Source: Octopus bimaculoides
Lineage: Eukaryota
DNA: 50,685 nt
Direction: 5' to 3'
Assembly (NCBI RefSeq): GCF_001194135.2
Contig: NC_069002.1
Location: 4,540,733-4,591,417, forward strand
Below, piece after piece: positions 50,139 through 50,439 of the stretch (the stretch's first letter is position 1; every line of letters begins with the position of its first letter). The notes below the pieces were generated by a model that was not told the origin of the DNA, made no database searches, and worked only from the letters and a program-made list of their open reading frames with translations. A program made the translations under genes and the position numbers.

Positions 50139-50236
50139 CAAGGTGGCAAGCTAGCAGAATCGTTAGCATGCCGAGTGAAATGCTTCGCAGTATTTTGTTC
50201 TGAGTTCAAATTCCACTGAGGTTGACTTTACTTTTT
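50139..50236 (+). mobile_element. SINE family A head (tRNA-derived), truncated at gactttacttttt
   Basis: caaggtggcaagctagcagaatcgttagc...gttctgagttcaaattcc...gaggttgacttt aligns with 1514-1615. Confidence 0.85.
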
Positions 50237-50356
50237 GCTTACGGCTATATCACGCTGAGAGCACTGGTTCTCGTCCGATCACCGAAGTTAAGCAACGTCG
50301 AGCCTAGTGAGTACTTAGATGGGTGTCCGCTTGGGAAACCTAGGTACTGTAAGCAT
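50237..50356 (+). rRNA. full-length (120 nt) 5S rRNA-like sequence, probably a retroposed or SINE copy
   Basis: gcttacggctatatcacgctgagagcactggttctcgtccgatcaccgaagttaagcaacgtcgagcc...gtacttagatggg..ccgcttgggaa...ctgtaagcat. Helix I gcttacgg/ctgtaagc; ICR box A- and box C-like motifs; no TTTT terminator follows. Confidence 0.9.
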
Positions 50357-50439
50357 CCAACACTTTACACGGTGGTGCATCAGCATGGCCGCAGCTCTAA
50401 GCTGAAACTATTAAAATAAAAAAAATTTAAATTAAAAAA
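50237..50439 (+). mobile_element. candidate 5S-derived SINE (SINE3-like) with a family-B-type tail
   Basis: The 5S copy is followed by ggtgcatcagcatggccgcagctctaagctgaaacta and an A-rich end, homologous to the family B tail. Confidence 0.65.

What the first reader, a model, noticed from the sequence alone, without database searches (positions are those of the whole stretch)
50139..50439. Candidate 5S-rRNA-derived SINE, possibly a tRNA-5S chimeric retroposon
Seen: a family-A tRNA-SINE head stops at gactttacttttt and is joined directly to nucleotide 1 of a complete 120-nt 5S copy. That copy has no oligo-T terminator and continues into an about 80-nt tail homologous to SINE family B, ending A-rich. 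The 3' half of the A element and a TSD are not visible. Known: 5S-headed SINEs (SINE3 class) exist in fish, amniotes, megabats and some insects and use LINE-derived tails. Inference: this is a 5S-headed SINE in an octopod, or a bipartite tRNA+5S element carrying both type-2 and type-1 Pol III promoters. I do not recall one described for cephalopods, but I cannot check.
Basis: partly seen in the sequence, partly recalled or inferred. Interest (0 to 1): 0.85.

Follow-up and report, generated by a model that had tools for sequence, protein, structure and literature searches.

The report
Octopus 5S-headed SINE-like retrocopy
A complete 5S ribosomal-RNA copy without its terminator is fused to the tail of a common octopus SINE. 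This is the build of a known class of jumping elements (SINE3) not yet formally described in molluscs; the tRNA-like piece in front looks like a one-off add-on, and family versus single accident could not be tested here.

Summary
Window 50237-50355 is a full-length 5S rRNA copy (Rfam 100.4 bits, 32 of 34 consensus pairs intact). A 5'-complete A-family tRNA-SINE head (50140-50236) abuts its nt 1. No oligo-T follows it. It runs into about 70 nt homologous to the 3' end of SINE family B and stops at the same A-rich end as B copies. No TSD is visible.

The A head ends in its own Pol III terminator (T5, plus an internal T4). A perfect 96-nt inverted duplication (50012-50107 / 50168-50263) spans the A/5S junction. 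The tail keeps the B-family terminal hairpin through two compensated base pairs.

Best reading (about 0.5): a SINE3-type retroposon, meaning a 5S head swapped onto the tail of the resident tRNA-SINE, as in HaSE3/HaSE1. The A head would be a locus-specific 5' add-on from reverse-transcriptase template switching.

A working bipartite tRNA+5S SINE is disfavoured. A one-off tripartite chimera is the main rival.

Copy number, the decisive test, could not be run because no octopus genome is searchable here. A 2026 Octopus vulgaris repeat annotation already lists four "5S" SINE families (9.8 Mb), so this is at most a new member of a known kind.

The parts
50012..50107 (-). Inverted duplicate arm: the reverse complement of 50168-50263, i.e. 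the 3' two-thirds of the A head plus 5S nt 1-27. (TA)n lies on its left.
   Evidence: the repeat finder I17: 96 nt, 100% complementary, 60 nt between the arms. blastn gives 69 nt plus 27 nt at 100%.
50108..50139 (.). 32-nt (TA)/(CA)-type filler between the inverted arm and the start of the A head. Together with 50140-50167 it forms the 60-nt loop.
   Evidence: Read directly from the sequence; arm coordinates.
50140..50236 (+). A-family tRNA-derived SINE head. It is 5'-complete, has a 14-nt internal deletion, keeps a B-box-like gagttcaaattcc at 50202-50214, and is cut short at gactttacttttt.
   Evidence: Matches A consensus 1-106 at 76%, E 1e-19. The alignment with 10 other A copies shows the shared 5' end and the deletion.
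50193..50196 (+). T4 run inside the A head, a weak Pol III terminator. It is specific to this copy.
   Evidence: T-run scan. Absent from the A consensus.
50232..50236 (+). T5 run that ends the A head immediately before 5S nt 1. Read as the Pol III terminator of the A-type transcript.
   Evidence: T-run scan and sequence. The A consensus reads ctttcat at this point.
50237..50355 (+). Complete 5S rRNA-derived head, 119 nt. The type-1 promoter positions are inferred by numbering against vertebrate 5S, recalled from memory: box A about 50286-50300, IE about 50303-50308, box C about 50316-50333.
   Evidence: Rfam RF00001, 100.4 bits, model 1-120. 32 of 34 pairs are standard. Promoter function was not tested.
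50356..50424 (+). Tail homologous to the 3' end of SINE family B. Similarity is significant from 50368; 50356-50367 is a short linker that aligns weakly with B.
   Evidence: B consensus 58-115 at 78%, E 7e-7. Multiple alignments.
50392..50404 (+). Terminal hairpin of the tail, CAGCU-CUA-AGCUG. It is the counterpart of the B-family CAGUC-AAAU-GACUG, with both inner pairs changed on both sides and still paired.
   Evidence: RNAalifold and pair counts on 10 tails: 88% of cells paired, against 2-30% in the slid controls. A neutral-decay simulation gives P about 0.0025, computed post hoc.
50413..50440 (+). A-rich 3' end (aaaataaaaaaaatttaaattaaaaaaa), followed by (TA)n microsatellite.
   Evidence: A-run scan and sequence. 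B copies end at the equivalent point.

Best explanation
The core of the locus (50237-50440) is a SINE3-type non-autonomous retroposon. It is a full 5S rRNA-derived head that has lost its oligo-T terminator, fused to the last ~70 nt of the tail used by the resident tRNA-SINE family B.

How it would work (inferred):
- The internal type-1 Pol III promoter in the 5S head (box A, IE, box C) starts transcription at 5S nt 1.
- With no terminator, the transcript runs through the tail.
- The tail's small terminal hairpin and A-rich end are what the partner LINE's reverse transcriptase recognises for target-primed reverse transcription.
- Such elements arise when the reverse transcriptase, while copying a tRNA-SINE RNA, jumps onto 5S RNA. 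This is a head swap, as proposed for HaSE3 from HaSE1.

The A-family head in front is most likely not a working part. It is 5'-complete and ends in its own Pol III terminator exactly at the junction. That is what is expected if, at this insertion, the reverse transcriptase reached 5S nt 1 and jumped once more onto the 3' end of a short terminated A-type transcript.

The layout reverse-complement(50168-50263), then 32-nt filler, then the full element, with (TA)n on both sides of the block, fits snap-back or twin priming during the same insertion.

Shown: the anatomy, the homologies, the T-runs, the intact 5S fold, the compensated tail hairpin and the perfect inverted repeat.
Inferred: transcription, the LINE partner, the template switches, and membership of a multi-copy family.
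For: 1. Full-length 5S with 32 of 34 pairs intact. Under 20-24% neutral decay, which is how far the flanking A and B parts are from their consensuses, 32 or more pairs survive with P 0.003-0.012.

2. No run of four or more T after the 5S up to the window end.

3. The tail is homologous to the B-family 3' end and stops where B copies stop.

4. The tail hairpin is kept through two double-sided changes (P about 0.0025). This points to a lineage under selection for retroposition rather than a decayed B fragment. The variant is found nowhere else in the window.

5. Zero differences between the 96-nt arms. By my arithmetic, exp(-192d), this means under about 1.6% divergence per arm since the duplication. 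If the repeat formed at insertion, the 22-24% distance of head and tail from the A and B consensuses, and the two mismatched 5S pairs (C9.A, C19.A), were inherited from the source RNAs. That fits a diverged SINE lineage better than cellular 5S rRNA.

6. Literature.
- O. vulgaris has four annotated '5S' SINE families covering 9,831,953 bp, about 0.35% of the genome, or roughly one element per 50 kb. That is what this window shows.
- The giant squid has about 24,000 5S-derived loci.
- HaSE3/HaSE1 and CoeSINE5/CoeSINE4 are 5S-head and tRNA-head pairs that share tails.

7. T5 at the A/5S junction and T4 inside the A head argue that the A head is a terminated transcript copy.
Against: - No second copy of the 5S-plus-tail junction was found: not in the window, not in 11 kb of O. 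bimaculoides DNA, not in protein space, and not in the metagenome, viral or prokaryote collections. None of these holds an octopus genome, so this is weak evidence.
- No TSD is visible.
- The '5S' class in the O. vulgaris table may partly be 5S rDNA arrays. Its 7 'recent insertions' average about 6 kb each.
- Type-1 promoters depend on upstream sequence and are often silent after retroposition (noted).
- The hairpin statistic is post hoc and rests on a 13-nt stretch.
- The inverted repeat could be later than the insertion, could be homogenised by gene conversion, or could be an assembly artefact.
Confidence: 0.5

Rival explanations
1. One-off tripartite chimeric retropseudogene. In a single LINE-mediated event the reverse transcriptase copied the 3' ~70 nt of a B-SINE RNA, jumped to cellular 5S rRNA and copied it to nt 1, then jumped to a short terminated A-SINE transcript and copied it to its 5' end. 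No family ever arose from it.
For: - All internal junctions lie at RNA ends: 5S nt 1, the 5S 3' end, and the oligo-U end of the A transcript.
- The A part is 5'-complete.
- Only one locus was seen.
- There are precedents: 5S/LINE-1 chimeras, tripartite chimeras by double template jumps (PMC2104539), and the preference for switching to small RNAs.
Against: - Such chimeras are rare; 253 were catalogued for human LINE-1, of which 10.5% involve 5S. 5S-class SINE sequence makes up about 0.35% of an octopus genome, so the prior favours a family member.
- The tail hairpin carries two compensated pairs, and the 5S has two mismatched pairs although the locus looks young. Neither is expected from cellular 5S rRNA joined to a random B transcript.
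- In human 5S/L1 chimeras the 5S is usually truncated and antisense. Here it is complete and in sense.
Confidence: 0.25
2. Assembly artefact or DNA-level rearrangement. Unrelated fragments (an A copy, a 5S pseudogene, a 5'-truncated B copy) were brought together by mis-assembly in a draft, repeat-rich scaffold, or by deletion or fold-back replication in a microsatellite tract.
For: - The window is a gap-rich draft with many N runs, one about 700 bp upstream at roughly 49290-49337, and dense (TA)n/(CA)n.
- A perfect 96-nt palindrome-like repeat is unusual.
- No TSDs are visible.
Against: - Both junctions fall exactly at functional RNA ends: 5S nt 1 after a T5, and the 5S 3' end. The tail ends where B copies end. 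Random breakage or mis-joins would rarely do this three times.
- The arms plus a 60-nt loop do not look like a missed-adapter palindrome (inference).
Confidence: 0.12
3. A true bipartite tRNA+5S composite SINE family. The A head, 5S and B tail would be retroposed together as one RNA carrying both type-2 and type-1 Pol III promoters.
For: - The A head is 5'-complete and directly abuts 5S nt 1.
- The junction occurs twice in the window.
- Chimeric 5S plus tRNA heads are known in Deu-SINEs, in the order 5S then tRNA.
- An upstream type-2 promoter could in principle compensate for the weak autonomy of type-1 promoters (idea prompted).
Against: - T4 and T5 runs inside and at the end of the A head should stop a Pol III transcript before the 5S. 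Both runs lie inside the perfectly duplicated arm, so they predate the duplication.
- The second junction copy is a local, perfect, doubly truncated inverted duplicate, not an independent insertion.
- No other copy was seen.
Confidence: 0.06
4. Edge unit or spacer of a tandem 5S rDNA array that continues beyond the window end, with the 'tail' being ordinary non-transcribed spacer.
For: The window ends only 330 bp after the 5S copy, so the downstream sequence is unseen.
Against: - There is no other 5S in the 50 kb upstream.
- There is no oligo-T terminator.
- The 'spacer' is homologous to a dispersed SINE tail and ends A-rich like it.
Confidence: 0.03

Closest known systems
HaSE3 (5S-headed SINE of Helicoverpa) and its tRNA-headed sibling HaSE1
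   Same: A 5S rRNA-derived head joined to the 3' region of a resident tRNA-SINE. The origin proposed for HaSE3 is template switching from the tRNA-SINE RNA to 5S rRNA during reverse transcription. HaSE3 has a lower copy number than its sibling, and some copies lack TSDs.
   Different: [quoted passage not shown] Here only about 70 nt of tail is shared, at 78%, and no LINE partner was found.
- HaSE3 was shown to be multi-copy; this element was not.
- HaSE3 has no tRNA head in front of the 5S.
CoeSINE5 / CoeSINE4 (coelacanth) and the SINE3 class in general (zebrafish SINE3, SINE-1_Pmo, megabat MEG, springhare Ped-1)
   Same: A 5S head carrying a type-1 Pol III promoter plus a LINE-type tail. The family pair differs only in the head, tRNA versus 5S.
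   Different: Those families have bodies or RTE UTR-derived parts and are documented as families. All are from vertebrates or insects, and none is from molluscs.
AmnSINE1 / Deu-SINE subgroup with a fused 5S and tRNA head
   Same: Both promoter-donor types sit side by side in one element.
   Different: The order there is 5S upstream of the tRNA part. The tRNA part lost its 3' portion and the 5S took over as promoter. Here the tRNA-type head is upstream and is separated from the 5S by a T5 terminator.
Chimeric retrogenes made by reverse-transcriptase template switching (U6/L1, 5S/L1; tripartite chimeras in Magnaporthe)
   Same: Small-RNA copies are joined at RNA ends to a 5'-truncated retroelement 3' part. 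Double jumps that give three parts are documented.
   Different: Those are single, non-propagating insertions, usually with TSDs. In human 5S/L1 chimeras the 5S is mostly truncated and antisense.
'5S' SINE families in the Octopus vulgaris repeat annotation (Bonar et al. 2026) and the ~24,000 5S-derived loci of the giant squid
   Same: Same animal group and same class label. The density of about 0.35% of the genome matches one copy per 50 kb.
   Different: Only table entries are available to me.

Membership tests
SINE3 (5S rRNA-headed SINE) | 5' head derived from 5S rRNA that covers the internal type-1 promoter region (box A, IE, box C) | tested here: met
   Rfam RF00001, 100.4 bits, model 1-120. 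32 of 34 pairs are standard. Promoter boxes were placed by position only, and their activity was not tested.
SINE3 (5S rRNA-headed SINE) | No Pol III terminator between head and tail, so transcription reads into the tail | tested here: met
   No run of four or more T from 50237 to the window end.
SINE3 (5S rRNA-headed SINE) | 3' tail shared with a partner LINE, or with another SINE mobilised by it, ending A-rich or in a simple repeat | tested here: inconclusive
   The tail is homologous to the SINE family B 3' end (E 7e-7), has the same end point and keeps the hairpin. No LINE carrying this tail was identified in the window.
SINE3 (5S rRNA-headed SINE) | Many dispersed copies that share the same head/tail junction | not testable with these tools
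   No octopus genome is searchable here. There is one locus in 50 kb, none in 11 kb of O. bimaculoides, and none in the protein, metagenome, viral or prokaryote collections.
SINE3 (5S rRNA-headed SINE) | Target-site duplications flanking individual copies | tested here: inconclusive
   No repeat of 6 nt or more flanks 5S plus tail. The whole block is flanked by (TA)n, which hides any TSD.
Bipartite tRNA+5S composite SINE | Both heads are part of one Pol III transcript, with no terminator between them | tested here: not met
   T5 at 50232-50236 lies directly before 5S nt 1, and T4 lies at 50193-50196.
Bipartite tRNA+5S composite SINE | Independent copies with the same tRNA-head/5S junction | tested here: not met
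   The only second junction is a perfect, doubly truncated local inverted duplicate. A genome-wide test was not possible.
Template-switch chimeric retropseudogene | Junctions at RNA termini, with a full-length small RNA in sense 5' of a 5'-truncated retroelement that has an A-rich end | tested here: met
   5S nt 1 follows the oligo-T end of the A head. The 5S 3' end is joined to the last ~70 nt of B.
Template-switch chimeric retropseudogene | Unique locus with one TSD pair around the whole chimera | tested here: inconclusive
   Only (TA)n lies on both sides. Uniqueness in the genome could not be tested.
5S rDNA array unit | Tandem repetition, with an oligo-T terminator after the gene | tested here: not met
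   There is a single 5S in the window and no T run after it. Sequence downstream of the window is unseen.

The most novel reading that the evidence does not exclude
The A head, 5S and B tail are one propagating composite: an octopod SINE that carries a type-2 (tRNA-like) Pol III unit directly upstream of a type-1 (5S) unit. The upstream unit would recruit TFIIIC/TFIIIB and so rescue the otherwise context-dependent 5S promoter after each retroposition. The T5 would then act as a terminate-and-reinitiate point rather than a dead end.
Probability: 0.06. Interest if true: 0.6.

Novelty: new member of a known kind. Interest (0 to 1): 0.35.

Why it matters
If it belongs to a family, this would be a sequence-level description of a 5S-headed SINE in a mollusc. 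A 2024 review lists the class only for reptiles, insects, fish and mammals. It would also be a further independent case of a 5S head being swapped onto the tail of the dominant tRNA-SINE.

Octopus genomes are more than 10% SINE. Knowing which heads and tails recombine there bears on how new SINE lineages are born.

The locus may also preserve the by-products of one insertion event: a second template jump onto a terminated tRNA-SINE transcript, and a snap-back inverted duplication. That is a useful natural record of reverse-transcriptase behaviour.

If it is a one-off chimera or an artefact, it is a curiosity of no wider consequence.

Tried and rejected
1. Finding other copies through protein space.
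- The 65-aa ORF 50222-50419 runs through the 5S and the tail. An exact look-up found nothing, and the word-index search found nothing.
- The exhaustive HMMER search gave 103 hits. All were translated 5S rDNA or 5S-derived repeats of other organisms. None had the B tail or this 5S variant.

2. Sampling octopus DNA.
- A SINE-A head ORF used as bait found no candidates.
- A mariner remnant used as bait gave one O. bimaculoides locus, L001, which is half N. It has two B copies and no 5S.
- It also gave four loci of an unrelated ENA assembly, with no A or B SINEs.

3. Pattern scans of the metagenome, prokaryote-genome and viral collections for the 5S variant, for 5S plus tail, and for the B tail all returned 0.

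4. Rfam at a permissive threshold gave only microsatellite and hairpin noise. This included a spurious MIR869 match on the inverted repeat, at 100.7 bits against a gathering score of 330.

5. Comparison with the canonical cephalopod 5S rRNA was not possible. The 1983 sequence paper is not held, and I did not rely on sequences recalled from memory.

6. The single-sequence RNAfold z-score of the 5S copy is uninformative (-0.96). The family-model pair count was used instead.

7. The tandem-array reading is considered unlikely (confidence 0.03), because there is no other 5S in the window and no terminator.

Full report
OBSERVATION

5S copy. Rfam's 5S model matches 50237-50355 on the plus strand over its whole length (model 1-120) at 100.4 bits, against a gathering score of 38. 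Of the 34 base pairs in the model consensus, 32 are standard pairs in this copy. The two exceptions are C9.A in helix I and C19.A in helix II. It is the only 5S-like sequence in the window, apart from the inverted copy of its first 27 nt described under The inverted repeat, even at permissive thresholds.

A head. Directly upstream, 50140-50236 is the head of the window's commonest tRNA-derived SINE, 'family A'.
- It matches positions 1-106 of a consensus I built from the window's own copies, at 76% and E 1e-19.
- It begins at the same 5' end (aaggtggc) as the full-length copy at 1514.
- It carries a 14-nt internal deletion.
- It breaks off at gactttacttttt, one base before 5S nt 1.

Tail. No run of four or more T occurs anywhere from the 5S to the window end. 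Instead 50368-50424 matches the 3' end of 'family B' at 78% over 59 nt, E 7e-7. In a multiple alignment the element ends at the same A-rich point as about ten other B copies.

TSD. No target-site duplication is visible. Nothing of 6 nt or more is shared between the 40 nt before the 5S and the 80 nt after the tail. The other candidate boundaries share only (TA)n.

Terminators in the A head. The A head ends in TTTTT (50232-50236) and holds a TTTT at 50193-50196. Both are absent from the A consensus. By established knowledge of RNA polymerase III, runs of four or five T are terminators.

The inverted repeat. A perfect 96-nt inverted repeat joins 50012-50107 to 50168-50263, with a 60-nt loop (I17).
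- It spans the A/5S junction. The left arm is the reverse complement of the last two-thirds of the A head plus 5S nt 1-27.
- The left arm is truncated at both ends, so it is a local duplicate and not an independent retroposition.
- The whole block 50012-50440 has (TA)n on both sides.

The tail hairpin. B-family tails share a small terminal hairpin, CAGUC-AAAU-GACUG. In an alignment of ten tails, 88% of cells are paired, against 2-30% when the partners are slid. This element has CAGCU-CUA-AGCUG instead. Both inner pairs are changed on both sides and still pair. Under neutral decay at 22% this outcome has P of about 0.0025. That figure is a post hoc test on a very short stretch. The tail variant occurs nowhere else in the window.

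Assembly state and source. The window is a gap-rich, microsatellite-rich draft. It is octopod. Its B family is also present in O. bimaculoides chromosome CM046625.1. Among hits to its mariner remnant that carry a source name, the best is an O. bimaculoides protein.

INTERPRETATION

A complete 5S head, no terminator, a tail shared with a resident tRNA-SINE and an A-rich end together make up the SINE3 build. The closest documented cases are pairs of families that differ only in the head:
- HaSE3 (5S head) and HaSE1 (tRNA head) in Helicoverpa. HaSE3 was proposed to have arisen by template switching from HaSE1 RNA to 5S rRNA during reverse transcription.
- CoeSINE5 and CoeSINE4 in the coelacanth.

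Three points favour a lineage maintained by retroposition over a chance pile-up of decayed fragments.
- The 5S fold is nearly intact, although the neighbouring A and B parts are 22-24% from their consensuses. After 20-24% neutral decay, 32 or more intact pairs are expected with P 0.003-0.012.
- The tail hairpin is compensated.
- The two arms have no difference in 96 nt. By my arithmetic this means less than about 1.6% divergence per arm since the duplication. If the repeat formed at insertion, the divergence of head and tail, and the two mismatched 5S pairs, were already present in the source RNAs.

Literature also raises the prior.
- The O. vulgaris repeat annotation lists four '5S' SINE families covering 9,831,953 bp. 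That is about 0.35% of the genome, or roughly one element per 50 kb.
- The giant-squid genome paper reports about 24,000 5S-derived loci, 'likely SINEs'.

THE A HEAD

A functional bipartite tRNA+5S element is unlikely. A Pol III transcript started in the head would meet T4 and then T5 before reaching the 5S. Both runs lie inside the perfectly duplicated arm, so they are at least as old as the duplication.

Nested insertion into an older A copy is not supported either. Neither the rest of the A element nor a TSD follows the tail.

The simplest account is that the A part is a copy of a short A-type transcript that ended at its own terminator. It would have been added when the reverse transcriptase reached 5S nt 1 and switched template once more. 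Switching to small RNAs, and double jumps that give tripartite chimeras, are documented.

The order reverse-complement(internal segment), filler, full element is what snap-back self-priming of the first cDNA strand, or twin priming, would give. That is inference from known mechanisms.

RIVALS

One-off tripartite chimera (about 0.25). This is the main rival. The same template switching could also have produced the 5S/tail junction in this single event. It fits the RNA-end junctions and the absence of a second copy. It fits less well with the compensated hairpin, the mismatched 5S pairs in an apparently young locus, and the much higher genomic density of 5S-class SINE sequence compared with such chimeras.

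Assembly artefact or DNA-level rearrangement (about 0.12). This cannot be excluded in a draft scaffold. However, three junctions that fall exactly at functional RNA ends argue against it.

Bipartite composite family (about 0.06) and edge of a 5S rDNA array (about 0.03). Both are minor.

LIMITS

The decisive test, copy number in an octopus genome, could not be run.
- No searchable collection here holds octopus DNA beyond one 20-kb locus that is half N.
- All indirect routes found nothing. These were ORF baits, the exhaustive protein search and DNA pattern scans.
The statement that this 5S differs from the rRNA gene therefore rests only on its two mismatched helix pairs.
- Part of the published '5S' class may be rDNA arrays, since its 7 'recent insertions' average about 6 kb.

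NOVELTY AND SCORE

SINE3 is a known class, and head swapping onto a shared tail is a known route.
- My searches found no sequence-level description for cephalopods.
- A 2026 annotation already tabulates 5S SINE families in Octopus.

The finding is therefore at most a new member of a known kind. The locus-specific features (terminated tRNA-SINE add-on, perfect inverted duplication) are of modest mechanistic interest. Interest 0.35.

Noticed in passing
window 1-50685: The window is very rich in SINEs and microsatellites. It has about 14 further A-family and 10 further B-family fragments, long (TA)n, (CA)n and (TATC)n-type tracts, and many N gaps, for example around 17500-18200, 30100-31000, 34000-34650, 45450-46150 and 49290-49337.
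   Followed up: partly
window 29287-29646 (+): Remnant of a Tc1/mariner-type transposase C-terminus. The best hit that carries a source name is O. bimaculoides LOC128250757, at 69% identity, and several relatives carry Pfam DDE_3. Pfam itself gave no hit for the window fragment.
   Followed up: partly
window 40477-40827 (+): A 116-aa ORF that ends in a C2H2-like zinc finger. All Pfam hits are below the curated cut-offs, the best being E 4e-5. It lies in a GC-richer stretch (40-44 kb, GC 0.43-0.45) and could be part of a transposable-element ORF.
   Followed up: no
L005 8263-8328: A degenerate 5S-like fragment, 78% identical to 5S positions 24-89 and below the Rfam threshold. It sits in an unrelated ENA assembly (ERZ21867824) that has no octopus A or B SINEs, and it is followed by a non-B sequence. 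It may be a 5S-derived repeat of another animal.
   Followed up: partly
proteins P0114, P0115, P0104, P0070, P0107, P0067: Several unrelated predicted 'proteins' in the public collection contain the same translated 5S-like block, followed in four of them (P0114, P0115, P0104, P0070) by a shared non-5S continuation (ANGHITLNTPVLVRSLKLSNVE.SQYLDGWPPGNTGCCW…; the first three continue LL[TS]FYSFLANFS). This looks like exonised or mis-called copies of a 5S-headed repeat in some other organism.
   Followed up: no
window 50014-50261 (-): At permissive thresholds the perfect inverted repeat scores 100.7 bits against the plant miRNA precursor model MIR869, whose gathering score is 330. Microsatellites give hundreds of sub-threshold miRNA 'hits'. 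All are spurious, which is a caution for automated ncRNA annotation of this genome.
   Followed up: yes
window 50330-50367 versus B copies (e.g. 28012-28060): The last ~15 nt of the 5S (aggtactgtaagc) resemble the B-family segment just upstream of the shared tail (aggtactgaggtt / aagtcctggggtc). This may be microhomology at the head-swap point, or it may be chance.
   Followed up: no
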